DNA of 64,000 nucleotides, from contig NC_068986.1 in assembly GCF_001194135.2 (NCBI RefSeq), positions 83,179,674 to 83,243,673 of the forward strand. The letters are read 5' to 3'. Under the pieces are notes generated by a model. It had not been told where the DNA came from. It did no database searches and saw nothing but the letters and a program-made list of their open reading frames with translations. Both the position numbers and the translations under genes were made by a program. Positions within the stretch are counted from its first letter, which is position 1; each line of letters begins with the position of its first letter. Origin of the DNA: Octopus bimaculoides. Lineage: Eukaryota. Shown piece by piece: positions 1,681 through 48,980 of this stretch.

Positions 1681-1912
1681 TCATACACCTGTCTTTGTCT
1701 TTTGTTTTCTATAAAGTTCATAAATATATATATGTGTATGTGTATATGGATGTAGTAATTCGTGTAAAAGTGTATGTGTGTGTGTGTGTGTGTGTATATA
1801 TGTATTTGTATATATGTGTGCATATGTATATATACATATAAATATATATAATAATATAAATGATATATATATGCATATATACATACATATATGTACATAC
1901 TTACATCTATAC

Positions 1913-1965
<53 letters not shown>
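1681..1965. repeat. (TA)n/(TG)n microsatellite tract, one of many (also about 16660-16740, 18790-18890, 42710-42750, 61540-61610)
   Basis: Direct reading. These tracts explain the YIYI/CVCV ORFs in the track. Confidence 0.95.
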
Positions 1966-18272: not shown

Positions 18273-18792
18273 GGTTTTTAAAGTAGTATCTTTGTGGACA
18301 TTTAAAGAGGATAATCAGTCACTAATGAAACCCAAAGCATGATGGAATTTGGATTTTATGTCTATGGAAGGACATCTTTTAGTATATTCCTTCTCTTTAC
18401 AAACACATTAGTCTCCATACATTTGTATGTCTATATAATTTTATCAATCTATTTTGTAGATATTTATGCATGCATAGCTCTTTGCGTGTATATGTTATGT
18501 GTGTTTTTGTGCATGCATATACATTCATATCAGTCTGCATTAGAATCTACTTACGTGTTCATGTATGGGCCTCTCACTAGTCATGATGCTTTTCTGCATC
18601 CACTTTCTCTCTCTCATCCACCCACATACGAACAGATGGTTTTCTGTTCCTACTACACAATACCATCTCCTAAACATTACTTAACACCTCCCATAAACAA
18701 ACTATTAATCAAATTGACTCCAACTAAAATGCCTTCTCAACTTCACCATTCAGACATTACATTGTGTTCTCTGAATATAGATATATGTATGC

Positions 18793-18881
<89 letters not shown>

Positions 18882-21800
18882 TATATGTAAATAAAATTTA
18901 TGTATATACATATCAATCTATTCCATGACCTTGTTGCTTCCTCCGTTACAGATAAGAAATATGCCAGCTTTCAGATTTATTGAGAATTTACCACTTTCAA
19001 CGAATTTTTGAAAAATAGGCCGTATGTATGGTAGCTGTATGGCCGAAAAATTTGCTTCCTAATAATGTGACACCTTATGCAAGTGTCTCCAGCTAACCAA
19101 AGCTTTGATAGTAGATTTGGTAGATAGAAAGTGAACGTTTTAGGGGTTCAACATTCTATGCTCATCTATCTTTTATTTGTTGTAAGGGGAAGAGAATATG
19201 CCCATAGCTTTTGTAAGCTCTTGGATATCACTAATGATGCTACAGAACTCCAATATGACAGCTGCAGGAAAAACATGAAAAGGAAATTCCAGAGTTGACA
19301 TTCTGGGGAGGAAAGATTGAGTATAGTGGTTAGCACAGGAAAATATGAGAGAAGAGAGAGAGAGATGAATGAGCTAGACAACCCTGAATAGAATGGTATG
19401 AAATCAGCCAGCTCAGAGGAATAGGGGTCAGGGTTATAGTGGTAGAAAAAAGAAAAAAAAGAGGAGCCAGAATATAGAATGCTTGTTTGTATGTAGGAAG
19501 TAGCAGCATCTTACAAGATATAGAAACAATATTTTGTTATGTCTCACTTGAGCTTTGTAACTATTAAGAACAGCAATTCTCTGGCCCTGAAGAGAAAGAC
19601 CAACCTTTGTGATGCAATTTTTGTTGAAATAAAGATATAAGATTGTCATGAGAGATCATCAATGATAGTGAAGGTTAGCATTTGTAGTGACTTTGAAGTT
19701 TTAGTTGCTTATTCTTTATGTGTGACCCTTCAGCATTCAAATTATTCTGTCAAAAGTAATGCTTATTTTTTTCACACCGTTTTGAATTAATCATGCAATA
19801 TTTTGTAGTTTTGAGATTTTCATGAGGTAACTGTTAATTTTTAGAATGATATTGTAAGATTGGTGTGAGAGGCCAGACACTGCCAGTTTGAACATAAAAT
19901 AGGTAGAATATCTTGGCCAGATATGGCTGGTTTAAATGCAAAAGAGTTAAGGAAGACAAGATTGTTTCCTTGATATATGTAGCAATTGTGTCTTTATGCT
20001 ACTGAAGAAAACAAGACTGGCATAACTCTAACGGAAAATGCTTTTGGTCCATGAAGACATACATTTAGCATGGTGTCAAAGTTGCATATGGATGTATGAG
20101 GGGACAGTATGCAGATCATTGACAGAAGTGTGTGTGTGGAGAATAAAACTAAACTTTGGGACATCAGAGTTGACAGTTAGAGAGAGCTCCATTCACATAG
20201 ATCATAACAGTGCAATCCAATAGAAAACCTATGATTCAAGGCATTAGCAGTGGATAGAGCCCATAGGCTTTAGTTAAGTTTGGAGAATTGTATGCCAGAC
20301 AGAGTCAAATGCAATTAGTCTATCAAGCCAAGATATTGATAAACAATCAGAAAAACTACATCTGCCTCAAGCAAAAGATTCAGGAACAGGCATGCTCAAC
20401 ATATTCACTCATTGAAATTTATAAATTCCATAAAACTAACACTATATATTACTAAGTTGAGGAAAAGAGCATCAACAATATTGAAATACTCTGGTCTGCT
20501 GTCTAAACTAAACACCCCTATATTAATGGATCAAAAGGATACTTTCACTGAAGAATAATATAACACCCTTCTAAGATATTAAACAAAAGATGAGATACTC
20601 TAAACATGACAGCCAACATATGGAAATTAACAAATCCCTTTATCACATACCTGTTCATCACTTATGCCACTATTACCCATTGCCTTCACCTGTCATATTT
20701 ATGCCCCTATTGCTCATATTAATCTCACTGCACTTCATTGCCAATATGACAAAGGATCTTTTCTATTTACTGAATGAGATGTGATCCTCTGACACACCTA
20801 GTAGAAGCAACAACTCAGCCAACCCATGCCAGCATGGAAATACACCTATATTGTCCTTTCACCAACATTACACTTTCCTTATCACCCTTGCTCTCTTACC
20901 TAACTTGAGGCATGTGCTTAAAGGACTTCATCAGATAGGCATGTACTTCAGCTATTCAACATATAGTCTCCCACTGGCCATTTGGTTTCAACATCCATCA
21001 TCCAACCCCACCATTTACCCACCTCTTGTTATCCATCATACTCTCACTCCTCTCTAGTGCTGGTACCATGATAACATGAATCCAGTGCACTGTTAAATGT
21101 GATGTCAGGTGTCTCATTAGTCTTGAAGATGTGGACAACCTCCCTAGTGCTGATGCCATGAACAAAATACCCAGTATACTCAGTACAGTGGTTGGTTGTA
21201 GAGAGGGCATTCTGCCATAGAAACCAAGCCAAAAATAAAACTTTGGGCCTCTGACCCATGTGAAAGCAAATGTAAAATGACAATTTCCCCCATACCTTGA
21301 TAGTTTGTATTTCAGATTAGTTCATGGTCATTATAAGCCATAAACTCACTGGAAACTGGAGGTGTTTGAAATTGAAATGTAAACCCTTGAACAGTCAAAA
21401 TAGTTTCTTTTAGTAAGTTATTTGACTAATTAACTGGTGTCATTGAAACATCAAAATTACAAAGTCAGATGACTGGTGCTTCTCCTTTTAGTTTCAAGTT
21501 GTGACATTGTATTGTTGAGGATTGAAGTGCACTGAATTTGAATCATGTTACTAATGTCTTTTCAAACTGAGATATTATTTGTATGAAAATTCTTGACAGG
21601 CAATTTATTAAAGTATTCTGCAACTTAATTTTTGGCAGTGTCACTCTTTAGAGTAAGCGGTGCTCTTTCTTATATTAATGTTTCAGTAATCTTTTAGTAA
21701 ATTCAAGAAAACTTTGTCTATCATTTTTATTATAATCAAAGTGATTCTCAAGTTGGTTGATGGGATTTTCACTTTGATTAATATCTGTATTTTGAAACAA

Positions 21801-34800: not shown

Positions 34801-37800
34801 ACTGTAAATGTTACATCCGTATACCAATCATTCCCCCTTCTCTATTACAGTTATGTTATCATGATGCCAAAGAAAAGACAGGCTCTGGTGGAATTTGAGG
34901 TGAGTTGGGCGATTTTACTAAATCCATTGGAAATATTGAAATTTGTATTTGCTGATTAGATGGTATTTTATCACTCATCAAATCAAGTTAATTTAAAGAT
35001 TTTTTTTTTTTTTTTTTTCCAAATCGTGTATATTTAACTGTAAGGAAATTATTTACTGTTGTATAGGATATAGCCGGAGCGACTGAGTGTGTGAACTATG
35101 TTCAGTCCAATCAACTTTATGTTAGTGGTCACCCTGCTTTCTTTAATTTCTCTACCAGTCAGAAGATCCAGAGACCAGGGTAAGCTTTATATATATATAT
35201 TTTAGAAAATATTGGGTCTGTTTACTGTGGATATAATTTCATGAAGATGATTTAAGGCCACTTAAAAGTATTGTTTGTAAATATTGTATTTTATTAAAAA
35301 GGAAGAGGTACAGAATAACGTACATATTTTACAACTTTAATATATATATAATCCATTTCTTTTGTTTGTAGTGGCCCAGAAGATATGCGGACTGCAAACC
35401 ATATTTTGCTCTTTACCATTTTAAATCCACAATATCCGATCACTGTGGTATGTAACCATTTTATTATTTTTTATTCTAATTGGGCATTTGTTTAATAACC
35501 ATTACAAATATCTTTGCATTTAATTTTCCAGGAAGTGATGCATACAATCAGTTCTCCATATGGGCAAGTACAAAGAATTGTTATCTTCAAAAAGAATGGT
35601 GTCCAAGCAATGGTTGAATATCCTTATTTTACAAAGTGAACATAGCTTTCAATAAATTGAAATTAATTGTTTGTTTATTTGCATTCTGACTTTAAAGGCA
35701 CTTTATTTACTTGCATAAAGCTGTTACTGGTTTTGCTGGAATGGCTTTTCCACTGTTGTACTATTATGATTAAATGCTTGGGGTGGATTTGTATAAATTG
35801 TTGGGTAAAATGCTTATTTGATAGGGTCATTTGTAAAATAACAAATTAATATCATATAATTGTTTCTAGATGTTCTTTGACATTTGGGAATTTTTACATT
35901 GTGTAATGTATTCATATGCTGAGTGCACAGGACGAAAATATACTGACATTCATTAAACTCTAATAGCTGGGTATTTGCTTAAAAACTCAACAATCCTTTC
36001 TGCTTTTTCTGGTGGCAGGAGGCAGGATTTCAACTCAGCCAAATCTGGTAATTTAACCCAAGATAAAGGCAAAGTTGGCTTAGACAAGATTTAGACCCAA
36101 GTGCAGTTGAACAAAGTATTTTAGTGATCACTGTACCAACTCTGTTAATTTGACATTTTCTCTGTGTATGCATTGCTGTGCAATTTAGAATTTTGAAGTC
36201 CATTTGCATGATTTTAGGTTCAATCTCAGTGCATAGCATTTTTGCAGGTCTCCTCTTCTGTAGCTCTGTACTGACCAAATCGTTATGAGTAGATTTGGTA
36301 TTGTTGCAGAAATTGCAAGAAGCCTGTTGTGTGAGCGTAATGTTTGTCTCTGCTTCTTTTGACATCACTGATAGTTGTGTTGCTATTATTCATTTCCAAT
36401 TTGCTGTGGAAACGTGTCTGGCTACGGGGAAATATTACATTCTTTGGAAATGAATGTTGGGTAACAGGAAGATCATTCAGCTGTAGTAAGTCAACCTCAG
36501 TAAATTGTGCAACCCATGCAGGCACAGGAAAGTGTATGTTAAAATGGCATGACTGTTTTATAAAATGTATATCTTGTAGTTAGTATTCCTTAACCATTTG
36601 TACGTTTGAAAGTGTTGATCAAGCAAAACGTGCAAAGCAGGCTCTGAATGGTGCAGACATTTACTCTGGTTGCTGTACACTCAAGATTGAATACGCAAAG
36701 GTAAATTTTCAAGTTTTTAATTCAGTATTAGAAATTATATTCACTGTTATAGATCTTGCTTCAACTATTTCTGTAATTTTTAATTTGTTGGCTTGTGAAA
36801 ATGAATTTAAGTTTCGCTGTTTCACTTGTTAAGTTACTTTCATTGCAGGGTTGTTTGTATTGTGAATCATTCAATGCTTAAAGTGGTATCATCAAATATG
36901 TCTTGTAAAGAATTTTATTTTGAAATATCTTACGGTCTAGTTTTTTTTTTTTTTTTTTTTTAAATAAATTCACTTCAATGGGTTTTTTTAATTTGTTTTT
37001 TTATCAGCCTACAAAATTGAATGTTGTCAGAAATGACAATGAAAGTTGGGACTACAGCAATCCTTCTCTCGGTAAGATGCAATTTTTAACATTTTAAATT
37101 TGATGGACACCAGCACTCTTATTTTCCTTTCTAGAACTGGTGGTAATCCTGGTTAACATACGCACTATCCAGTTGAAAATGACCATAACTTGCTTAACTC
37201 TAACCTATTTAATGTTTCAATATTGCAAGCCAAAGGCATGGCTGTAGTTTTAATGTAACAATAGTTGCTACTAACATACTCTTTCTTAAATTAGCACTAA
37301 GCAACCAAAACAATGAAATTATTTGTTATCTTGGTTCCTTAGTGATGTCTTCTGGTCTTGTTTAGAATAATTCTGTTCTCTTGTTGCTTAATTGGGATAG
37401 TTTGCGAGTTTTTCCTTCGATTCCATAAGGGTGCTAGTGAACAACAATACCATTACATTTTGCAGAACTTAGGGAATCTGTCACCTTTGTTTAGTAGATA
37501 GCCCAGTGATGGGTAATCTGCTAGTCAAATTTCTTTAATTGGTGTAATTTATAATGGCTTGGTTGTGGTATACTAATAAATTATTCTAAGGTAGGTGGTT
37601 TTAAAATTGGCCATGGGCTTCTTCAGTCATTAACTTTAAATTATCTTTCTATTGTTTATTAGTATCTTTTTGAGGAGTGGTTATTAGGGGAGGAAAAATG
37701 CATGCATACAAATACAAACAAGTGACCATTTCAGATAACATACAAAACATTTGTCTCAGTCATATTGAAACTAAATAAACTTTCAATTACAAAACATTTT

Positions 37801-40800
37801 ATATCGTATCATAGACTTAACATTCCAAATTTCGTTACAAAACATGCACATTTTATTAAGCACAATCATCTGTATTCTCAGTAAATGAATTAAAATGATC
37901 ATGTGCTGGCAGGGAACTACTATTGTCTGAAAGATGGTAGTAGGTTAGTGCCCAGTGAAACCACTTGTTTGTGAAGTTATTCACTTGTTTTATTCTGCAC
38001 TAGCTTTTTACATTCAGCCAATTTTAAGTTGTTAAAAGTGATTTCCCCCTTATTTTTTTTTATATTTTGAACATTAAAAAAATCTTGCCAGCCCTTTTTT
38101 AAACAGTTGATTATGAAGCAAGTTGTTTGCTGTCTGAGATGCCATCCTTTCCAAAATCCCCAACATGAAGACAAGTCATCCATCTTGAGAAAATCCATTT
38201 GAAAACAAACTTTAAAATCATTACACTAACATTTGGGTTTTTATTAAACCCATTAAAACAAGTCAGCCACATACAACGTAGAAAAGAAGTGGACATGTTA
38301 CCTAATATTCAGAATTTGTAAATGTTCCACCTTTCTATCCAGCAAAATTACAAACAGAAGCTGCTATTCTACATCTAGAACAATAGAAAAAGTTGCAGAA
38401 TAAACTCAAGCACAGAAAGATATCAACATCCACATTACTCATCTGACCGTCACAGGTCACAGACTGGAGCATTCTCCACCTGCAGACAGACTTCCCATAC
38501 ACAGAAGAAGCACTATTCAGTCAGTCAAGTACATCAACCAAACTTAAAATACAATATCATCACCACCACCATCACTACCAAGCAGATACTCACCACCGCA
38601 CAGAACAAAACATAAAGCGGCCAGGTCCACACAAGGTGTCACTATACCCTGTAAACCCATCCATCTGTCTGACTCCTACGCTTGTTTGCCTTCCTACAAC
38701 CAAGTCTGGTTAGTTTACTGACCTGTGATTCTGTGTGCATTATACAGGGTGTAGGCCAGTGCAGGCTCGGCCCTCCTGCTACTACTACTACTGCTGGATG
38801 AGGAGGAGGAGGAGAATGTGAGCAGCATCGTGTTGATTGAACCATATCAGGCTCAACTACTTCATTGACCAACAGCTACTTCTGGCTTTAACCAAATCAC
38901 CATGGCTCCTTCCATTGCTGTTATCTCACCAGAAAATCAACTGGTAGATTTTTTATTTTTCTCCTTATTTTCCAGGATGTCTTTTATTAAAAATAATATT
39001 TATTTTTTAATATTTAAGTTTTCCATATATCTATTATACATTTCCTGTTTTTCCTTTTGGATTACTAATTTTCATTCTCTGAAGCCATTTAAGATATTGG
39101 CTTGCTTTCAAAAAATTGACATTACCATCTAACATTAAAACAGAAAAGGTTAGACTATAATGAGATATTTATTTCCTTCAATTTATTATTTTCATACATT
39201 AATCTTTTATAATGCTGGAACCTTTTAGAGCAAATGGAAGAAGTGTAGTCATCTTCATTTGATTACCATACGCTGACTGACTGACTGCTGCTGCTATCAC
39301 CAGTTTTGTGTTTTTAACTGCAACAAGTAATAGTTTGGAAATATAAGAAAATTCAGTTTGTATACAGAACACTGCATCTGGTTTTACTGTATTGAAAAGA
39401 TAAAGTATTTGTACTCTAGCAAGATCTGAACATATTCACAAACACACGTAGGCTGATTCTAAGTAGTGTAAGCAGAATAAACCCAGTGAAATGTTGAAAA
39501 TTTACATTTATTACATTACATCTAAATTGCTAGTCGAATGAATTCTAATTTAAAACTTCTTTATGCATAGGTAATTAGTGTAATGTGGATCAAATTAATT
39601 TAAAGTAATATATGCAGTGACTGCTCAATCATTCCCTACCTCCCCCCATACGATTATTTCGATGTTGATCCATTGAACTCTAAATCTAATAATCTCAGGC
39701 ATCTGACAAACTTTCCCAATTCCAAATATTTGGATTTAATCTTTTGTATTTTTGTAAATATAAAAATTTCACTTGGACTTCTTCACATTCAATGGGTTTC
39801 ACTTTTATTAAATGAACTATGAATTGAGAACTCCTTTCCATTTATTTTTTAAAATGTATGTATACCAAAAAAAAAAAAAAAAAAGCATTAGTTTATATTG
39901 CTGGGGTGAGTTTTCCATCCAGCTCATAGGTAAGTTGAGTAGAAAATTGCCAGTTATGTTTTGTTTTTGTGTGTGGGATCATGTGTTGATTTTTTTTCTT
40001 CTTCTTCCACTCCCTTTTCTGTGTCGTACATAATAGTCCAAACCACTGTAGTCAGATTCCCAGGCTGTAGTGAGTTACTTTCCTTGTACAGAATTGATAT
40101 TTGCCGGATCTTGCAACTGGGCTTTTTTTCTTCATCCACCTCTCCTCTCCCTTCACCACAGGACTTTTAAGAGAGATTACTACATTCTGGGAATGTAGAT
40201 TTTCTTTCTGGAGGACACACAAAGCAAGCTGTTTTAATTCATAAGTGCATGAACTGGTTAAATTTTAAAATTCCTTTGGATATATTAACATTTTTTCTTA
40301 AGGCGTAGGTGAGGTTGAAATAGTTCGATTTATGAGAATGCACAACTTGTGCTTGATTTTATATATTCTATACATTATCTCTGGTTTAGCTAATTCGCTT
40401 ACTAAATCTGCAAATTAACTCTTCCCATTCATCTTAGTTTTTATGATATTAACATTTTAATGTGTTTCCTAATTTACAGGGGTGGGGTTTTAATTTCTTT
40501 TTTTTCTCATTTCTAATTTACACTAAAGCTTTGTTTCATAATGATTCAGATCGAGGAGTTAATTTAGTTAGATTTACATTGCCACATTTCCTGAAAGTTA
40601 TGGCTGGTAATTTATGTTGACCAATCTTGTGCCAGCCAAATTCTTAGTAAATTCTTTCAGCTGAGAAAGTTAAAACCATAGTATACTAAAAGGCAACAGC
40701 AGTCAGTTTATCTGCGGTTTGTTTGGCAAACTAGTAACTTCACTGTCTGCCGCTTTCCTTGCTTGCTCTGAGACTTATCTCACCTGTGTCACTTTGTTTC

Positions 40801-42705
40801 AGGTAAGAGTCCTGTGGTTGCTAAAAATCAGCCTTTGCTGCAAGATCCGCGCTATGCACCAGGGCCCACTCCCTATGGTGAGTGTCCTCAATCACCAGGT
40901 GAAGTATTGTTCTAAAGCTCCATTTTCTTCTTAGTTGTTGTCACATCTCATAATGCTCTAGTTTTGAGTTGCATAATATTTAACAATAGAGCTTCTCTAT
41001 CTTGGTTACTAGAATTTATTTTAAGCAATACCTCTCTTTTAATATATTTTGGTGCCAGTTTTTGATACTGAAAAGTAGTGTCCTGTATAATGCAGAGTGC
41101 TACTTGGTCACACGTGTATTGAAAGTGATTGAATATATGCATTTAAAAAAAAAAAAATTTTTTTTACTTTATCTAAAAAGTGCTATACGGCAACTATTTG
41201 TGGTATCTGTTAGTGTGAATTGTTTACTGTGAAAATGCTTGTTAAATGGCATGGCAGGCTGCTGTTATTTTTTCAATATATCTTGGCCTTATGGGCTGTT
41301 CTCCATACTTTTTTTCTATTAGTGCAGATATTTTCTTCAAACTGTCTGCATCCTTAAACTATATTACAATGTAGATTTTAACAATCATTTAGTTCCTGTG
41401 TGATATTTTTCTTCTCCATTTGTGGATTTGGTATCTCTGGTTGGTTTTCAAACTATAAAATATACAGCCTTTATGTTTTAGCTAATTAACCTGAAATAAT
41501 TTTTGAACCCCTTGTCCTGTCAAGCTTATAGTAATTTTCTCCCCTCTCACTTAGTATTTTTCCCTTCTATTAGAATTAGCAAAATGTATTGAATCTTGCA
41601 TTTCTTAGTTTTTTCTTCTTTTTTTTTTAGCAACCATTTAAAATGTTTTCTACAAATTAAAGAAAATTTTTAAAATGTAGTTAAGGGCTAAAGTGAAACA
41701 AATTTTAGTATTCAGATTGAAAAATAAGTAATTTTGTACAAAAATGAATTATTAGCACCATTTCATATTTCATTATTTGCTTGCTGAATTTAATTTATTC
41801 ACATTGTCATCCAATCATTAATTCTTATACTCTAATTTGCCATAATGTTGATTTGCTTCATTTTATTCATTTGTTTATTTTTCATATCTAAAGAAGTTGG
41901 ACTCTTGGGTAATTTGCTTTTTATTTTTTTTTCTTCTTCCTCCATTTTGTCTTGGATGATTGCTTTTCTAGTGCTTGCTAGTCGTGTCATCTAAGATGTT
42001 GTAAAGTTACTGTTGTGCTACCTCGTATGTTTTGACTTAACTATACCTTTGGCTGGCATTAACACTTTCACAATCTTTCTTGGGTTGGGCAAGATATAGT
42101 TAGGATTAAAATAGTTTTTCTTTTTATGAGTGTCGTCTTGGTTTTTGTATTGTGTGTGTGTGTATATATATATATATCTATATATATAAATATATTAAAT
42201 GTGGCAGCTCTTGTACTGTTTGCCACCCCCTCAGCTTAATGGCTCTCTCTCTCACACCTATATTTGAATAAATATGGTACATATTCTTTTAGATATATAT
42301 ACATACATGCATAAAATATAAATGGAAATGGGTTTTTTATGAATACAGCTGCTCTGGTTCTTTTATGTTTGAACATGAAAGTGAATTCAGAGAGAAAGTT
42401 GGTATTGATATTTTAAATGTTTGGTATCAGCTTATGAGATTGTTTTTTATATAAACAAAAGAAAAAATACTCTTGATATTAAAACTCTTTGAGTTTGCCC
42501 TCTTTTGTAGATCTATTAAGAAATGGAGTTTTTCTCTGAAGTGTTTTAAATTATTGGATTGTTACATATGTGCAAATTTTGAGTTTTACACTGTACATAG
42601 CTGAGTGAGCCTACTGTTTCTGCAAAAGTTTTATTTAGTATTGAAAATGTTATTTTCGTATAACAGCTGATTTGGATTTTTTATTTTTTAAAAGAATTTT
42701 TTAAA

Positions 42706-42752
<47 letters not shown>

Positions 42753-45700
42753 AATACATTGCATTTGAAATTGTCTACATCTACAAAAATAGTATAAGTA
42801 CTGAGGTAAATTAATGGCTGCCTAAGCCCTGAACATAATAGTTTGATAATGATTGTTAGGAATTTTCCAACTATTAAATTTGGGGGATTTATGCTGTAAA
42901 TATTGCTTTGATTGTTATTGTCTTGCCAATCTCTCCTTCATTTTTTTCTTGTTAGTTAAAACTTAATTTGCTAATACTTTGTGCATTAGTTTTCATTATA
43001 TATTACTCTCTTGCTTTCACTCTTAATACACATTATGCCTCTAATTTTCCTTGCATGCTTTAACAAAACATTTCATTCAAAGCACTTGTATAGTAATTAG
43101 CAACTATTTTCCTTCATATTTTATGAATAAATAGTATGGTTTAAGCTACTTAATTAAATTTAAGGAAAAATATTGCCAGTCAGTAGCAGAATGCAAATAA
43201 TTTAGGACTCCAACTTTATTTACCTGCTCAGATTATCATAAAATGGTTGCGAGTTAGCATTAACAGCACATTTAAAATATTTGTTAAAGCTCTTAAGACA
43301 TAGAAATTAAAAGTTACAATGGATATTTTTGCCTTGGGATGGAAACTAAATCTCAGCAAAGCTACTAACCTGCGATTCCAGTTGGTAAGCAGTATAATAA
43401 ACTTGTAACCTATTGCTAGACTTCTTCATAATCTTATATTGAATAGGCAGCCTACTCATTAGGGATGTAGTCACAAAAGTTTGGTTGTATTTTATTTTCT
43501 TAAATTTTATAGAGCAGTAGGGGTGTTATTCATTATCATACGATTATCAACTGGCATGCCAACAAGTACATGTACTTCAATTGAAGAAATTTTCTGTTCC
43601 TCAATGATATTAGGATGATGGCTATGAAATTTGTAGTATTACTTATGTGGCCCATGGAAATTATTTTTATCATTTTGAGTCTTGGATATTTTGATTTGAT
43701 TGCTACTGAAATTGTTCTTTACATGTAATAAAGTTTTTATTTATTTTATTTGAATTAGCTATTGCAGAATTTTGGATCATAATTTAATAGAAATGTAATT
43801 GGAATTTTGGGCTGTGGTTTTTACTGCTTTTTTTTTTTTTCTTGCCATGTTTTCTCTCATGCTTAAAGTTGGTTGTTCTGTAATTTCTACATAAATTTAT
43901 TCTCAATTATTTTACAATGGATCATTTTATTGAAAGCTAATTAAGTGTAATTTGTCTGAAATAATTTTTAATATAATTAAACTGCTTATTAATATGCAAG
44001 ATATATGAAAGTAATCAATTTGATGCTATTATTTGTTTTAAATTCAAATTTTAGGGAATCATCCAGATGTGCGAAGAGGTGGTGGTGGTGGTCCTGGAAT
44101 GGGACCTCCACCTGGTGGCCATGGCGGTGGATATGGTGGGCCAGGTCCCATGTATGATGGTGATAATTATGACAACTATTGTGGTGGAGGAGGAGGGGGC
44201 AGAGGTGGCTATGGCATGCAAACTGAGCGTTATGGACCAGGCAGCACTGGAATTCTTGTAAGCTTTCTTTATATGTTAACATTAATTTCACTCATTTCCC
44301 TTTCCCCGCCAACAGCCTACACACAAATAAGTGCGTAGTGAATCACAAGTTCGCTTCCTGTTTCAAAATATTGAAAGACTGTTCAGGCAAGTTCTTTGCA
44401 AGAGTTTAGAGCTGTTCATGATAAATTTTATTAATCTAAGTGCTTATTCTCTGAATCTGTTAAGAATTTCTTGTGGTCCATTTCAGTATTTGTCTGTTCA
44501 AGATAAGCATATTGAATGACTGGTATGCTTTTATGGGTATTTTTTCAAAAACGAATTCAAACAAGAGTACTCAGAGAGCATAACCCTGTGACAAGAAAAC
44601 ACCAACATCCTCTCAATGATTAGCCACAGAAGATTTTTAAGATGGAAATATCTGAAATAAACTTTCTCTCACAAACAAAAATAAAAATGAGCCTGACTGT
44701 TCTTGAAAATTAAGTATTAAAAAAAATGATGGCGGGGTGATCCAGAACCCTTGTCTGGTTCCTGATCAATCTCAATGGTAGTCAAGGAATGTGAGGGTGG
44801 CTGTAGAAAATTTAGCAACTATCTAATAAAAGCCAGTGAACAAATTCCTCATTCAAAGTTGTTACAGCCTAAAGGGGAATAATTGAGAAAGACTTGAAAG
44901 TTAACGTGGGATCATAATCATGTAAAGTAGATATAACATAATCCAGAATCCTTGTCTGGTACCGGATTGATCCTAAAATCTAATCAGTTTGTGCCAGTCG
45001 TGAGGCCAAACATCCCTGAAAGTTTCATCTGGATCCACCCAGCGATTCTTGAGATATCATATCTTGTCCATGGACAAAGGACGCGACTGAAAACAATGCC
45101 TTCGCTAAGGTGGGGGTAATGATCTGTTTAATCTCAAGCACAGATTTTTTTTTAACTAGACATTTTGGGACTTCAGATACTGGTTTTACAAAATTAGTAC
45201 TGAGACAGACCAACAGAGCCTGTATGTGGTTGCATGACCTGCTAGAAAAAGTAGCCAAACTTTATTTACAGAATAGAAAATCCTGGCACATTCAACCAGT
45301 ATCCGAAGTTTCAAACTGTTAAAAAAAATTTTTGATCTGTGACTGAGATTGACAAGTTCCATGAAACTACTCTCATACAACACTGGATATTTTAAGAGTA
45401 AACCCTGTTCTGTGTACAGCCAGTATCCCAAGTTTCAAAGTGTTCAGTTAAAAAAGTTTTAAAAATCTGCTTGAGATTGAAAAGGTCCGAAATGTCTTTT
45501 TTGTAATGTATCATGGCTACATGAGCAAGTTTATCCTGTCCATATTTTTTTTTTTTTTTAGAGAGAAAATTTTAGATAAGCTGTGTCAATTCTTGTTACA
45601 GGTTTTTTGTGCATTACTATTATAGTGCAGGTTTCTCTTAGCCTTTTTTTTTTTTTTGTGTGTGTGTGTATGGCCAACTCAGAACTTATTTCGTTCTTTT

Positions 45701-48700
45701 TACTGTTTCCAATTTTACTTTTGACTTTTACTGACATCAGAAAGTTTATGGGTAAACTGCATTTGGAAAGAACATTTGTCGTTAATCTGGTTCAGTTGCA
45801 CACCATAAGTTAACTTATTAATCAAGTTCTGTGGTAACTGTTTCAGGCTGCAGGTAGATTGAGTTTTAGAAAGTGCAAAATGAATTGAGGTTAGGAAGTT
45901 AGCATTTGACATTTTTTGTGTTGAACGGTTTTAAAGTTTTGTGTTTGTTCTTTGAAGAATATACTTTTTACTTCCAGGATCGCTATGGTGCTCCTCCAAT
46001 GCCACCTTACGAAGATCCTAACTCGCGTATGATGGGGCAACACCAAAGTGGTGGTGGTGGTGGTGGTGGCGGTCCTCAACAAGGAGCAGTACTTATGGCT
46101 TATAGCCTTAATATGGATAAAATTAACTGTGATTCAATTTTCAATTTGTTCTGCCTTTATGGTAATGTTGTACGGGTAAGTTATGGTTGTTTTTTGTTTT
46201 GTTTTTCTTTCAGTAGAAATGTTTCTTAAACTACAAATTGTTTGCTTGAGATAACTTTTGTTTTTTTCTTTTTATAATTAGATTAAGTTCTTAAAGAGCA
46301 AAGAAGGGTCAGCAATGATCCAAATGGGGGATAATCAAGCAGTGGACAGAGTCATTCAGAATCTCAGTGGCTGCTACTTTGTTGGTAAAAAGATACAACT
46401 GGGGTTAGTATTTTTCATTCACTTAGTATATTCTTTTTGGCTACTGCTTCTATATGGGTAGCGTGTTTTACCAGCTGTGTTTTGTCTAAATTTGATTTAA
46501 GTGTCTCGGTGTGTATATAATGATTCTTCAATAAATCAAATTATTTGTCAAATGATTATCTTTGCCACAGTTTTATTAGTGAAAAGATTTATGGAAAAAT
46601 AGCCTTTTTTTTTTTGTCCCTCTGGAAAAATTGGCAATTATCTTCCATGTTTATTTTTCTTTTTAATACAGATATTCTAAGCAGGCTTTTCTGCAAGATG
46701 TTCCTAATCCACATACTCTTCCAGATGGATCTCCATCATTCAAAGATTTCATGGGTAGCCGAAACAACCGTTTCACTAACCCAGAAGCTGCAAGCAAGAA
46801 TCATATCCTTTTTGAATTAATTTTACATGAATAAATAACATGCATGCATTGTGTTAATACTTGTTGCATATAGTAACTCGTTTTATAGGTGGGGGGTGCA
46901 TTTAATTTTCTATTACTAAAACAGGATGGAAATATAAAATAAATTTAGTATAACAGAAACAGATAACTATTTGTTGTTGAATTATGTTTCCTTGTAAATT
47001 GTACAAATGTTTACAGTTTTGAGTTTTGCTTGAAATCCTTAACATACGTCAAGTATCCAAGGGCCTGCTAAAGTACTACACTATTTCAATGCTCCACCCA
47101 ATATAACAGAGGATGAAATCTGTCAGGTTGGTTATAATTATTTACTTTTAGTCTTTGATGTAAGAGAATGTTATGTTCTTCAATAAATTCCCATTCTATT
47201 TTGTACTAACTGAGCACATTTTTTATACCAGGTGTTTACAGATGCTGGAGCAAAGAGTCCTGTAAGGATTAAACAGTTTCCTTCCCGTAGTAAGTATTTA
47301 CTTTGTCTTTGTGTTTTCCTTCAGCTCATAGATGTGGCTGTGATGCCAGGCTTAGTCTTATTGTGTCACTGTGACCAGGTGTTTTTGATTATAGCCCCAG
47401 GCCAACCTAAGACTTGTTAGTGGATTTGGTAGATGGAAATAGAAAGAAGGCCATTGTGTGCATGTGTCTTTGTGTTGATTTCTCCCTCACCGCAACTATT
47501 TGACAACTAGTGATGGTTTGTTTGGAGCACCATAACTTAGAGAGGATCATAAAACTCATAGAATGTGCTAGGCTTTAAAGAATAGTACGTGGGGTCTTTT
47601 TTCTTTTTTTTTTTTAAGGACCCTTCAGGTTGGTGTTCTAGCATGGCCGCAGTGCAGTGACTGAGGCGGGTAAAAGATTAGTGTCAGGAAATTTAAGCAG
47701 GGTTTTCTTTATGGTGTTTGGTTTGATTTGCGTCAGTGTTAACTGAATATTTTTCTTAATAGTTTTAATTTGTGTTTCAGCGGAAAGAAGTTCTACTGGG
47801 CTGGTTGAGTTTGAAACTAAAGCCGATGCTATTGAAGGCCTTGTGGCTTGTAACCATCAAAGTATTCCCAATCCTAGTAAGTTCTGTTTTCATGAAATTT
47901 TTTCAGCTTTACACATAAATAGCACCTATGTTCACTGTGTATTATGTGCAGTGGTGAATTAATGATGAACTGAGGACCTCGTTCTATGGTATTTGTGAAT
48001 TTAGACTGGTTTTATAAAGTAAGACATCAGCATAGGAAATTGTTAGATAATATTCAATGAGTTATACAACAAAATTTTAATATTGAAGGATTGTGCAAAT
48101 TACTGGTTATGTGTTAACTTAATATACATTAAACAGAATGAAATACTGAAATGTAAATCAAATTTACATGCACAGGCTGGCAATATTCCTAGAAATGCTT
48201 GGATTTCTAACTTCTGAACATGTATGAGATGTCTCCTTTCCTTCTGCATAAGGTTTAATTTCTACGGAAATCACTCCAAAGGATAAAGTAAAAAATTAAT
48301 CTAATAGTTTCATTTCCTTGAGAGGATTGTAGCCACATCTAACATCTTCCTTAAAAATTACTAAGAAAAGTATTTTAAAAATTTTTACTATATTCAGGTG
48401 CAAATCAATGGAAAAATTGATAGAAATCTCCAGTGGTTTGCAGCTCTCAGATGTAAAATAGTGTAAATTTGTTTACATGGTGAAATCATGTGTTATCACA
48501 AATGTACGATTGAAATTTGCACTGAAATTTTCCATTTAAACACAACTAGGTTATTACAGTCATTTTTGAGCAGGTTTGCAACATTTGCTTGTGAAATTTT
48601 AAGCCAGCTATACCATCTTGGTATCGAAAGGGTTAAAATTTGTAATTAGTATGTGACATTGTTTACTTGACTAAATTGCTTACAACGGCTCAAGTATATG

Positions 48701-48780: not shown

Positions 48781-48980
48781 CCCCTACCTCTGTTAGATTC
48801 GTTTGTATCTCTAGGATTTTACCGGCTGTTAGTTTTCACTTACCCACCTTGCTTTTCTTTTTTTCCATTATGACATGGGCTCGTTACTTCAGTGCTGTCT
48901 TTCTGCTTTTGTTTATTTCAGATGGCAAGAATCCATTTGTCTTCAAGCTGTGCTTTTCTCAGACCCCTATAATGGGTTAA
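31774..48980 (+). CDS. HNRNPL: Heterogeneous nuclear ribonucleoprotein L (hnRNP L / smooth orthologue), 17 coding exons, 1701 nt, 566 aa, four RRMs
   Basis: Manual exon chain with consistent phases: 31774-31851, 34613-34734, 34851-34899, 35067-35179, 35372-35447, 35532-35617, 36604-36700, 37008-37071, 40803-40877, 44055-44257, 45978-46175, 46282-46403, 46672-46802, 47053-47126, 47232-47289, 47781-47876, 48922-48980. It translates without stops into hallmark hnRNP L motifs: SPVVHVRGL, NHILLFTILNPQYPITV, QRIVIFKKNGVQAMVEF, LNGADIYSGCCTLKIEYAKP, NCDSIFNLFCLYGNV, KDFMGSRNNRFT, KNRIQGPAKVLHYFNAP, FKLCFS. Confidence 0.95.
34613..34734 (+). CDS. HNRNPL: hnRNP L exon 2 (start of RRM1)
   Basis: CAG| acceptor, DKLMEDPHKPSPSPVVHVRGLSETVVEQDLVDTLQNFGCI, donor AG|GTAAGT. 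Confidence 0.95.
34851..34899 (+). CDS. HNRNPL: hnRNP L exon 3 (RRM1)
   Basis: YVIMMPKKRQALVEFE, GT-AG boundaries. Confidence 0.95.
35067..35179 (+). CDS. HNRNPL: hnRNP L exon 4 (RRM1 end)
   Basis: DIAGATECVNYVQSNQLYVSGHPAFFNFSTSQKIQRP, GT-AG boundaries. Confidence 0.95.
35372..35447 (+). CDS. HNRNPL: hnRNP L exon 5 (RRM2 start)
   Basis: GPEDMRTANHILLFTILNPQYPITV, GT-AG boundaries. Confidence 0.95.
35532..35617 (+). CDS. HNRNPL: hnRNP L exon 6 (RRM2), ends at a U12 donor
   Basis: EVMHTISSPYGQVQRIVIFKKNGVQAMV-E, followed by ATATCCTT. Confidence 0.93.
35618..36603 (+). other. U12-type (minor) AT-AC intron, hnRNP L intron 6
   Basis: 5' site ATATCCTT at 35618, branch point TTCCTTAAC at 36586-36594, terminal AC at 36602-36603, no polypyrimidine tract. 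Splicing restores QAMVE-FES. Confidence 0.93.
36604..36700 (+). CDS. HNRNPL: hnRNP L exon 7 (RRM2)
   Basis: FESVDQAKRAKQALNGADIYSGCCTLKIEYAK, preceded by TTCCTTAAC...TAC, donor AAG|GTAAAT. Confidence 0.95.
37008..37071 (+). CDS. HNRNPL: hnRNP L exon 8 (RRM2 C-terminal extension)
   Basis: PTKLNVVRNDNESWDYSNPSL, donor TCG|GTAAGA, phase 1. Confidence 0.95.
37700..38640 (+). promoter_or_regulatory. Bipartite CA-rich intronic cluster (candidate hnRNP L binding platform) in intron 8
   Basis: Dense ACAT/TACA/CACA/ACAC motifs at about 37700-37870 and 38160-38640 on the sense strand of an otherwise T-rich intron set. Confidence 0.65.
38748..38817 (+). other. Candidate poison cassette exon, 70 nt (alternative longer form to 38943)
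   Basis: Branch-point-like TACTGAC at 38716-38722, CAG acceptor ending at 38747, purine-rich (GAG)n enhancer-like tract, donor AAT|GTGAGC at 38818. Inclusion gives a premature stop. Confidence 0.6.
40803..40877 (+). CDS. HNRNPL: hnRNP L exon 9 (75 nt, symmetric phase 1-1)
   Basis: KSPVVAKNQPLLQDPRY resembles the QPPLLGDHP linker motif. Acceptor TTTGTTTCAG|, donor ATG|GTGAGT. Confidence 0.85.
44055..44257 (+). CDS. HNRNPL: hnRNP L exon 10 (Gly/Pro/Tyr-rich linker)
   Basis: Open Gly-rich frame in phase with exons 9 and 11. Acceptor TTTTAG|, donor CTT|GTAAGC. The donor position is the least certain boundary in the model. Confidence 0.8.
44560..45122 (-). mobile_element. DINE/Helentron-like non-autonomous element in hnRNP L intron 10
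   Basis: Reverse complement of the element at 59815-60190 (TTATTACC...GTTTGTTTGT...GATATCTCAAGAA...GGATGG type start). Confidence 0.6.
45978..46175 (+). CDS. HNRNPL: hnRNP L exon 11 (linker plus RRM3 start)
   Basis: ...GPQQGAVLMAYSLNMDKINCDSIFNLFCLYGNVVR, GT-AG boundaries. Confidence 0.95.
46282..46403 (+). CDS. HNRNPL: hnRNP L exon 12 (RRM3)
   Basis: IKFLKSKEGSAMIQMGDNQAVDRVIQNLSGCYFVGKKIQL, donor GG|GTTAGT. Confidence 0.95.
46672..46802 (+). CDS. HNRNPL: hnRNP L exon 13 (RRM3-RRM4 linker), ends at a U12 donor
   Basis: YSKQAFLQDVPNPHTLPDGSPSFKDFMGSRNNRFTNPEAASKN, followed by C|ATATCCTTTT. Confidence 0.93.
46803..47052 (+). other. U12-type (minor) intron with AT-AA termini, hnRNP L intron 13
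   Basis: 5' site ATATCCTTTT at 46803, branch point TCCTTAAC at 47036-47043. Only the AA at 47051-47052 restores KNRIQ. Confidence 0.8.
47053..47126 (+). CDS. HNRNPL: hnRNP L exon 14 (RRM4 start)
   Basis: (R)IQGPAKVLHYFNAPPNITEDEICQ. The start is fixed by the conserved KNRIQ frame, donor CAG|GTTGGT. Confidence 0.88.
47232..47289 (+). CDS. HNRNPL: hnRNP L exon 15 (RRM4)
   Basis: VFTDAGAKSPVRIKQFPSR, donor GTA|GTAAGT. Confidence 0.92.
47781..47876 (+). CDS. HNRNPL: hnRNP L exon 16 (RRM4)
   Basis: ERSSTGLVEFETKADAIEGLVACNHQSIPNP, GT-AG boundaries. Confidence 0.95.
48922..48980 (+). CDS. HNRNPL: hnRNP L exon 17, terminal coding exon
   Basis: GKNPFVFKLCFSQTPIMG then TAA at 48978-48980. LKLCFS-type C-terminal motif. 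Confidence 0.93.

What the first reader, a model, noticed from the sequence alone, without database searches (positions are those of the whole stretch)
46803..47052. Minor-spliceosome intron that fits the protein only as a rare AT-AA intron
Seen in sequence: a perfect U12 donor (C|ATATCCTTTT) and branch point (TCCTTAAC, 47036-47043). The nearest AC (47046-47047) lies only about 5 nt from the branch A and frameshifts RRM4. The AA at 47051-47052 lies about 10 nt from the branch A and restores the conserved K-N-R-I-Q (AAG AAT C|GT ATC CAA). The AG one base further (47052-47053) also breaks the frame. Established knowledge: U12 3' sites are set largely by branch-point distance, and AT-AA termini are a rare known class. 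Inference: three competing acceptors within 8 nt (AC, AA, AG), two of them unproductive, could act as a fidelity-dependent expression switch. The terminal A sits in an AAG context favoured by ADAR, so in a heavily editing cephalopod AA-to-AI editing is a testable side hypothesis.
Basis: partly seen in the sequence, partly recalled or inferred. Interest (0 to 1): 0.7.

Follow-up and report, generated by a model that had tools for sequence, protein, structure and literature searches.

The report
AT-AA minor-spliceosome intron in hnRNP L gene
This is a real minor-spliceosome (U12-type) intron in an hnRNP L-like gene that ends in AA instead of the usual AC, the same AA ending recurs at the same intron in three other distantly related animals, and it belongs to a known rare class with no evidence for the proposed switch or RNA-editing roles.

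Summary
The exon ends ...AAG AAT C at 46802, followed by ATATCCTTTT. The branch site TCCTTAAC lies at 47036-47043. Only the junction 46802|47053, where the intron ends AA, keeps the frame.

With that junction, the last seven exons give a 208-aa product. It aligns without gaps across the junction to solved hnRNP L RRM3-4 (PDB 3TO8, E=5e-65).

I recovered the orthologous intron from 18 other distinct intron copies (17 genomic sequences):
- AT-AA in 3 more (L004, L016, L026), all ending CAA|G.
- AT-AC in 12.
- AT-AT in 1.
- GT-AG in 2.
- Several further taxa lack the intron.

Exons are saturated at third positions and intron interiors do not align, so an assembly error is very unlikely. The branch A lies 9-13 nt from the intron end in every copy. 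The AA (10 nt) fits this range; the AC (5 nt) does not.

AT-AA is the commonest non-canonical minor-intron ending in the literature. The "fidelity switch" has no supporting evidence. The ADAR idea lacks its prerequisite, because no duplex is predicted around the site.

The same gene also has an ordinary AT-AC U12 intron at 35618-36603, orthologous to the human HNRNPL/HNRNPLL one. No RNA data could be accessed.

The parts
46672..46802 (+). Upstream coding exon of the hnRNP L-like gene (RRM3-RRM4 linker); ends ...AAG AAT C in phase 1
   Evidence: translation G-YSKQAFLQDVPNPHTLPDGSPSFKDFMGSRNNRFTNPEAASKN; preceded by a pyrimidine tract and AG at 46670-46671.
46803..47052 (+). U12-type (minor spliceosome) intron, 250 nt, terminal dinucleotides AT-AA
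   Evidence: this is the only junction that keeps the frame. The orthologous intron was found in 18 other distinct copies.
46803..46812 (+). U12-type 5' splice site ATATCCTTTT (consensus RTATCCTTT)
   Evidence: The same donor sits at the same codon position in L001-L004, L006-L008, L010-L026 and L028-L030.
47036..47043 (+). U12-type branch-point sequence TCCTTAAC; presumed branch A at 47042
   Evidence: the branch A is 10 nt from the last intron base, within the 9-13 nt seen in all orthologues.
47046..47047 (+). Close-in AC, 5 nt from the branch A; using it shifts the frame to a stop
   Evidence: frame; several AT-AC orthologues carry an AC 4 nt from the branch A that the frame shows is not the productive site.
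47051..47052 (+). Terminal AA of the intron (productive 3' splice site)
   Evidence: The same CAA|G ending occurs in L004, L016 and L026.
47052..47053 (+). AG formed by the last intron A and the first exon G; using it shifts the frame
   Evidence: The G is fixed by the split Arg codon C|GN, so any A-ending version of this intron has this AG.
47053..47126 (+). Downstream coding exon (start of RRM4), 74 nt, followed by an ordinary GT-AG intron at 47127-47231
   Evidence: (R)IQGPAKVLHYFNAPPNITEDEICQ.
35618..36603 (+). Second U12-type intron of the same gene (in RRM2, ...AMVE|FE...), canonical AT-AC. Donor GGTTGA|ATATCCTTAT; branch site TCCTTAAC at 36587-36594; branch A 10 nt from the 3' end
   Evidence: It lies at the same position as the human HNRNPL (AT-AC) and HNRNPLL (AT-AT) U12 introns listed in the supplement of PMC8280824.
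34622..48980 (+). hnRNP L-like gene: the part that could be traced, from RRM1 to the stop codon at 48978-48980
   Evidence: tblastn exon map; Pfam RRM_5 and RRM_10; PDB 3TO8 hnRNP L E=4.8e-65.

Best explanation
The stretch 46803-47052 is a 250-nt U12-type intron of the A-type (AT-AN) class in an hnRNP L-like gene. It lies just before RRM4, inside the Arg codon of K-N-R-I-Q.

The inferred mechanism is the standard one for this class. The U11/U12 di-snRNP recognises ATATCCTTTT and TCCTTAAC. The 3' cleavage site is set mainly by distance from the branch A, so cleavage falls after the AA at 47051-47052 (10 nt). This gives the mRNA ...AAG AAT C|GT ATC CAA....

The AA ending is a tolerated variant of AC, one mutation away from it. 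At this particular intron it has persisted or recurred in several deeply separated animal lineages.

Shown here: the motifs, the frame, the homology across the junction, and the conservation of position, spacing and AA ending. Inferred: that the minor spliceosome actually uses this junction, and that it is the dominant one.
For: - The motifs and the three frames were checked.
- The seven-exon model reads through to a stop. All five other introns in it are GT-AG with pyrimidine tracts.
- The product matches Pfam RRM_5 and RRM_10. It aligns without gaps across the junction to hnRNP L RRM3-4, PDB 3TO8, E=4.8e-65.
- In homologues K and N are invariant, and R and I are at least 90% conserved.
- Genomic read-through ORFs translate 'KNHIL' or 'KNRIL' in other species. 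This shows an ATATCCTT or GTATCCTT donor at the same codon position.
- 18 other distinct orthologous intron copies were resolved: AT-AA x3 (L004, L016, L026), AT-AC x12, AT-AT x1, GT-AG x2. The branch A lies 9-13 nt from the 3' end in all of them.
- The AT-AA loci share only 34-51% third-position identity with the window and with each other. Intron interiors of the window, L001, L004 and L005 do not align better than shuffled sequence. The loci come from independent assemblies.
- The gene's own canonical AT-AC U12 intron has the identical 10-nt spacing.
- Literature: the 3' terminal base of AT- introns tolerates C, A, G or T (PMC1635337). AT-AA is the commonest non-canonical minor-intron ending (PMC10639083).
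Against: - No transcript or read data could be reached. The protein database held no spliced product of this species; the best hit was 76% identical. The junction is therefore inferred, not observed.
- A shift of both boundaries by +1 (a TA-AG intron, giving K-N-H-I-Q) is also in frame. It is rejected only on mechanism and on conservation of the Arg.
- The NJ tree on 67 aa places the window next to the AT-AC locus L001 rather than with the AT-AA clade. The history of the AA state (shared or convergent) is unresolved.
Confidence: 0.85

Rival explanations
1. Assembly or sequencing error. The true genome reads ...TCAAC|GTATCC (a dropped C) or has AC in place of AA, so the intron is an ordinary AT-AC one. 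The mRNA would be identical, so the reading frame cannot exclude this.
For: The nearest relative by exon protein identity, L001, has ...GCCAAC|GTATCC. This differs from the window's ...GTCAA|GTATCC mainly by one extra C.
Against: Three other independent assemblies (L004, L016, L026) also end this intron in CAA|G with the same spacing. They share only 34-51% third-position identity with the window. The site is not a homopolymer for the supposedly missing base.
Confidence: 0.05
2. Fidelity-dependent expression switch. The AC, AA and AG acceptors within 8 nt compete. Use of the AC or AG yields frameshifted transcripts with a premature stop, so hnRNP L output tracks the accuracy or activity of the minor spliceosome.
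For: Both alternative junctions hit a stop about 20 codons on, well upstream of later exon junctions. Selection of the U12 3' splice site is described as error-prone (PMC3584512). The AA|G arrangement is retained in four lineages. A-type introns are spliced less efficiently and depend on CENATAC in human cells (PMC8280824).
Against: The AC is 5 nt from the branch A, outside the 9-13 nt used in all 19 distinct copies, and similar close-in ACs are bypassed in AT-AC orthologues. The AG is an unavoidable by-product of the Arg codon. AT-AG is reported as disfavoured. The extra AC is specific to the window and absent from L004, L016 and L026. There are no expression data.
Confidence: 0.07
3. ADAR edits the terminal A (47052) to inosine, so the spliceosome reads AT-AG.
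For: Nothing further was found.
Against: The 200 nt around the site fold no better than shuffled sequence (z = +0.45). No inverted repeat covers 47052. Editing would create AT-AG, the disfavoured combination. AT-AA introns are spliced in organisms without heavy editing. The claim that the organism is a cephalopod was not verifiable here.
Confidence: 0.02
4. Both boundaries lie one base to the right, giving the intron TATCC...CAAG (TA-AG) and an mRNA that encodes K-N-H-I-Q.
For: It is in frame and ends in AG (derived).
Against: No spliceosome is known to use a TA 5' end. The Arg is at least 90% conserved. In AT-AC, AT-AT and GT-AG orthologues the same exon start, G of C|GN, is required.
Confidence: 0.01

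Closest known systems
AT-AA / 'A-type' (AT-AN) U12-type introns (Levine & Durbin 2001 and Dietrich et al. 2005 as cited in PMC8280824; survey in PMC10639083)
   Same: ATATCCTT donor, TCCTTRAY branch site about 10 nt from the 3' end, no pyrimidine tract, and a terminal A in place of C.
   Different: Nothing in kind. This instance sits in a protostome-type hnRNP L gene, at a position not mentioned in the HNRNPL/HNRNPLL minor-intron papers I read.
Human HNRNPL (AT-AC) and HNRNPLL (AT-AT) U12 introns (PMC8280824 supplement; HNRPLL twintron, PMC3564746)
   Same: Same gene family. They are also A-type, and HNRNPLL also has a non-canonical 3' base. The window gene carries the orthologue of that intron at 35618-36603 (AT-AC).
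   Different: The human introns are in RRM2 (...MVE|F...), not before RRM4. At the RRM4 site, vertebrate-like homologues instead have a presumably U2-type GT-starting intron about 20 nt further downstream (...PSK|V).
Subtype switching and loss of U12 introns between lineages (established knowledge: Burge et al. 1998; surveys PMC7367187, PMC10639083)
   Same: The orthologous intron is AT-AC, AT-AA, AT-AT or GT-AG, or absent, depending on lineage.
   Different: Seeing all of these states at one intron position is unusually complete, but it is not a new phenomenon.

Membership tests
U12-type (minor spliceosome) intron | 5' splice site matching RTATCCTTT directly at the exon end | tested here: met
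   ATATCCTTTT at 46803-46812.
U12-type (minor spliceosome) intron | Branch-point sequence TTCCTTRAY a short distance (optimum 11-13 nt) from the 3' splice site | tested here: met
   TCCTTAAC at 47036-47043. The branch A is 10 nt from the last intron base and 11 nt from the first exon base. The optimum is from PMC3584512.
U12-type (minor spliceosome) intron | No pyrimidine tract before the 3' splice site, unlike neighbouring U2-type introns | tested here: met
   The 3' end reads ...AACATACGTCAA. The other five introns in the model end in T-rich tracts plus AG.
U12-type (minor spliceosome) intron | Orthologous introns in other species are also U12-type | tested here: met
   18 other distinct copies have U12 donors and branch sites at the same codon position.
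U12-type (minor spliceosome) intron | Removal depends on U11, U12, U4atac and U6atac | not testable with these tools
   Needs knock-down or in-vitro splicing.
AT-AA subclass | The junction actually used leaves A...A as the first and last intron bases | tested here: inconclusive
   Frame, homology and three AT-AA orthologues require it. No RNA evidence was reachable.
ADAR editing substrate | The edited A lies in a stable RNA duplex | tested here: not met
   Fold z-score +0.45. No inverted repeat covers 47052.
ADAR editing substrate | A-to-G mismatches between RNA and genome at the site | not testable with these tools
   No reads available.
Regulated unproductive splicing switch | Measurable, condition-dependent use of the frameshifting acceptors | not testable with these tools
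   No expression data. The sequence argues that the AC is too close to the branch A.
hnRNP L / hnRNP LL protein family | RRM3-RRM4 tandem with full-length similarity to hnRNP L | tested here: met
   PDB 3TO8, E=4.8e-65, residues 1-203 of the model against 12-213 of the chain. Pfam RRM_5 and RRM_10. RRM1-2 exons were found by tblastn.

The most novel reading that the evidence does not exclude
The CAA|G ending, kept at this intron in at least four deeply diverged lineages, might be selected rather than merely tolerated. It places a frameshifting AG one base past the productive site in a gene for a splicing regulator that carries two A-type U12 introns. Output of hnRNP L would then be coupled to minor-spliceosome accuracy or to an A-type-specific factor of the CENATAC kind.
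Probability: 0.06. Interest if true: 0.6.

Novelty: new member of a known kind. Interest (0 to 1): 0.25.

Why it matters
Gene predictors that accept only GT-AG, GC-AG and AT-AC introns will break or frameshift this gene at RRM4. The call is therefore useful for annotation. The set of orthologues is also a compact natural series for studying how U12 3' ends drift (AT-AC, AT-AA, AT-AT, GT-AG, loss) while the branch-to-3' distance stays at 9-13 nt. It does not change what is known about minor splicing.

Tried and rejected
- I looked for transcripts of this species, or of the AT-AA species, in the protein collection. None was present; the best hit was 76% identical, and the full-coverage hits I inspected read into flanking introns (genomic, lacking this intron) or came from other taxa.
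- L002, L003 and L006 carry the donor, but the contigs end before the 3' splice site.
- Intron interiors do not align between the species compared, so no conserved intronic element could be sought.
- An Rfam scan of the whole window found nothing.
- A long-ORF scan gave only low-complexity ORFs and no clue to the organism.
- Dietrich et al. 2001 and 2005, the primary mutational studies of U12 3' sites, are not held in the library. I relied on reviews that cite them.
- I considered a duplicated alternative exon in the window, as seen in L001. None was found at E<1e-3, and the 105-nt downstream intron leaves no room for one.
- I ran no further search on naming the organism, because the verdict does not depend on it.

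Full report
**1. What is in the sequence**

- The upstream exon ends ...GCA AGC AAG AAT C at 46802.
- The intron begins ATATCCTTTT at 46803.
- TCCTTAAC lies at 47036-47043.
- It is followed by ATACGTCAA and then GTATCCAAGGG.
- Joining after the AC (47047) or after the AG (47053) gives ...KGLLKYYTISMLHPI* in both cases.
- Joining after the AA (47052) gives ...NRFTNPEAASKNRIQGPAKVLHYFNAPPNITEDEICQ.

Other in-frame ends three bases either side would require GT or TA as the last two intron bases, read directly.

The two motifs are not statistically unusual in 64 kb. RTATCCTT occurs 11 times against 5.8 expected, and TCCTTAAC 4 times against 2.4. The significance lies in their placement at homology-defined exon ends.

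**2. The gene**

The last seven exons are 46089-46175, 46282-46403, 46672-46802, 47053-47126, 47232-47289, 47781-47876 and 48922-48980. They read through as 208 aa only if the intron is 46803-47052. The five other introns in this stretch are GT-AG with pyrimidine tracts.

The product hits Pfam RRM_5 (E=1e-37) and RRM_10. It aligns without gaps across the junction to the crystal structure of hnRNP L RRM3-4, 3TO8, E=4.8e-65. In that alignment AASKNRIQGPAKVLHYFNAP lies opposite AAKNRIQHPSNVLHFFNAP. Among homologues K and N are invariant, and R and I are at least 90% conserved.

**3. The same intron elsewhere**

The protein search returned mostly short ORFs called on genomic contigs.
- Four of them run from the exon into 'KNHIL...', which is AAR AAY C|AT ATC CT. 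This is an ATATCCT donor at the same codon position.
- One runs into 'KNRIL...', a GTATCCT donor.

Fetching those contigs, plus one pattern scan of metagenome contigs for the exon end and donor, gave 29 loci with a U12 donor at this position (L027 matched only as uninterrupted exon). In 23 of them the downstream exon could be found.

Collapsing identical copies leaves 18 distinct orthologous intron copies besides the window:
- AT-AC in 12.
- AT-AA in 3: L004 ACCTTAAC+ATTTCTCAA|GT, L016 TCCTTGAC+GATTTCCAA|GC, L026 TCCTTAAT+TCCTGCAA|GT.
- AT-AT in 1: the second copy of a duplicated exon in L001.
- GT-AG in 2: L005 and L009.

The intron is absent in L027 and in the genomic ORFs P0001, P0002, P0004 and P0006. 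Vertebrate-like sequences have a different intron, beginning with GT and presumably U2-type, about 20 nt downstream (...PSK|V).

**4. Why an assembly error is unlikely**

The four AT-AA sequences come from different assemblies. They share only 34-51% identity at third codon positions. Intron interiors of the window, L001, L004 and L005 do not align better than shuffled sequence.

All four AT-AA copies end CAA|G. A dropped C in the window alone (compare L001, ...CCAAC|GT) remains formally possible. It would have to coincide with the genuine AA state seen in three other lineages.

An NJ tree on 67 aa groups L004, L016 and L026 together and places the window next to the AT-AC locus L001. With so few sites this is weak. 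I therefore leave open whether AA arose once or more than once.

**5. Site choice**

Across the 19 distinct copies the branch A lies 9-13 nt from the last intron base. The count includes the window's intron and the gene's own canonical AT-AC U12 intron.
- The window's AA is at 10 nt, the same as that AT-AC intron (TCCTTAAC+CATTTGTAC|GT).
- The AC at 47046-47047 is at 5 nt.
- Several AT-AC orthologues carry an AC 4 nt from the branch A (TTAACtac...) that the frame shows is not the productive site. Such close-in ACs are therefore commonplace and are skipped.
- The AG at 47052-47053 is at 11 nt, so distance permits it. However, it exists in every A-ending version because the exon must start with the G of the split Arg codon C|GN.
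- Reviews state that mixed combinations such as AT-AG are disfavoured, that the optimum distance is 11-13 nt, and that U12 3' site choice is error-prone (PMC3584512).

**6. The two side hypotheses**

The 'switch' has no positive evidence. What can be said is that mis-splicing to the AG would give a premature stop.

For ADAR, the 200 nt around the site fold no better than shuffles (z = +0.45). No inverted repeat covers 47052. Editing would also convert AT-AA to the disfavoured AT-AG.

I could not verify that the organism is a cephalopod. Rfam, long ORFs and the protein search gave no named close relative.

**7. Comparison with what is known**

- The 3' terminal base of AT- introns is known to tolerate C, A, G or T (PMC1635337).
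- AT-AN introns form the 'A-type' class. In human cells they are spliced less efficiently and depend on CENATAC (PMC8280824).
- AT-AA is the commonest non-canonical minor-intron ending in animals and plants. Non-canonical endings make up about 3.8% of conserved animal minor introns, and molluscs are relatively rich in minor introns (PMC10639083).
- Human HNRNPL and HNRNPLL each have an A-type U12 intron, AT-AC and AT-AT, but in RRM2 (...ATGGTGGA|ATATCCTTTG and ...ATGGTTGA|ATATCCTTTA; supplement of PMC8280824).
- The HNRPLL intron is conserved to lamprey (PMC3564746).
- The window gene has the orthologue of that intron at 35618-36603...ATGGTTGA|ATATCCTTAT, AT-AC.

The gene therefore carries two A-type U12 introns. 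The one under review is at a second position that I did not find mentioned in the HNRNPL/HNRNPLL minor-intron papers I read.

**8. Verdict**

This is a genuine U12-type intron whose productive form is AT-AA. It is well supported by frame, homology and comparative data, and it lacks only direct RNA evidence. It is a new example of a known class.

The regulatory and editing ideas are unsupported. The comparative series at this one intron (AT-AC, AT-AA, AT-AT, GT-AG, loss) is the most interesting by-product.

Noticed in passing
window 35618-36603 (+); branch site 36587-36594: The same gene has a second U12-type intron, canonical AT-AC, in RRM2 (...VQAMVE|FESVDQ...). It lies at the position of the human HNRNPL (AT-AC) and HNRNPLL (AT-AT) U12 introns, so it is an ancient conserved minor intron.
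   Followed up: yes
L001 5264-5337 and 6558-6631: This relative has two tandem 74-nt copies of the exon that follows the U12 intron: RIQPPAKVLHFFNAPPSIDEDGLKK and RIQSPTRMVHFYSAPPGITEAEVSQ. Each is preceded by its own TCCTTGAC branch site (AT-AC and AT-AT endings) and followed by a GT donor. They look like mutually exclusive exons. A U2-type donor cannot pair with a U12-type acceptor, which would enforce the exclusivity, as described for JNK genes (my recollection of Letunic et al. 2002). The window has no such duplicate.
   Followed up: partly
L008, L010-L014, L017-L021, L024, L025, L028-L030 (3' ends of the orthologous intron): Many AT-AC orthologues have TTAAC followed by tac/cat... and then the used ...TAC|G at 13 nt. 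They therefore carry an unused AC only 4 nt from the branch A. This is a natural control showing that close-in ACs are not the productive site.
   Followed up: yes
P0001, P0002, P0004, P0006, L027; P0059-P0066: Several lophotrochozoan-like genomes lack this intron altogether, and some also lack the next one. Vertebrate-like homologues have a GT-starting intron about 20 nt downstream (...PSK|V). The position has a history of loss, and possibly of replacement.
   Followed up: partly
L009 and L026 (contigs JAAUYG010214965.1 and JAAUYG010025735.1): Two contigs with the same accession prefix, presumably the same sample, carry different versions of this gene region, one GT-AG and one AT-AA, with about 76% protein identity. 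They are either two host species or two paralogues in one genome.
   Followed up: no
window 46791-46803 and 47020-47032: A 13-nt imperfect inverted repeat (85% complementary) could pair the exon end and 5' splice site with the stretch just upstream of the branch site. Sixteen repeats of similar quality occur in 1.5 kb, so it is probably chance.
   Followed up: no
window 46049-46072: A run of GGT repeats (GGTGGTGGT...GGCGGT) lies directly upstream of the mapped start of the RRM3 exon. It probably encodes a Gly-rich linker. The exon start, and any exons in the 9-kb gap 37071-46088, were not resolved.
   Followed up: no
window 1795-1962 and 18775-18913: Long (TA)n / (ATAT)n microsatellites.
   Followed up: no
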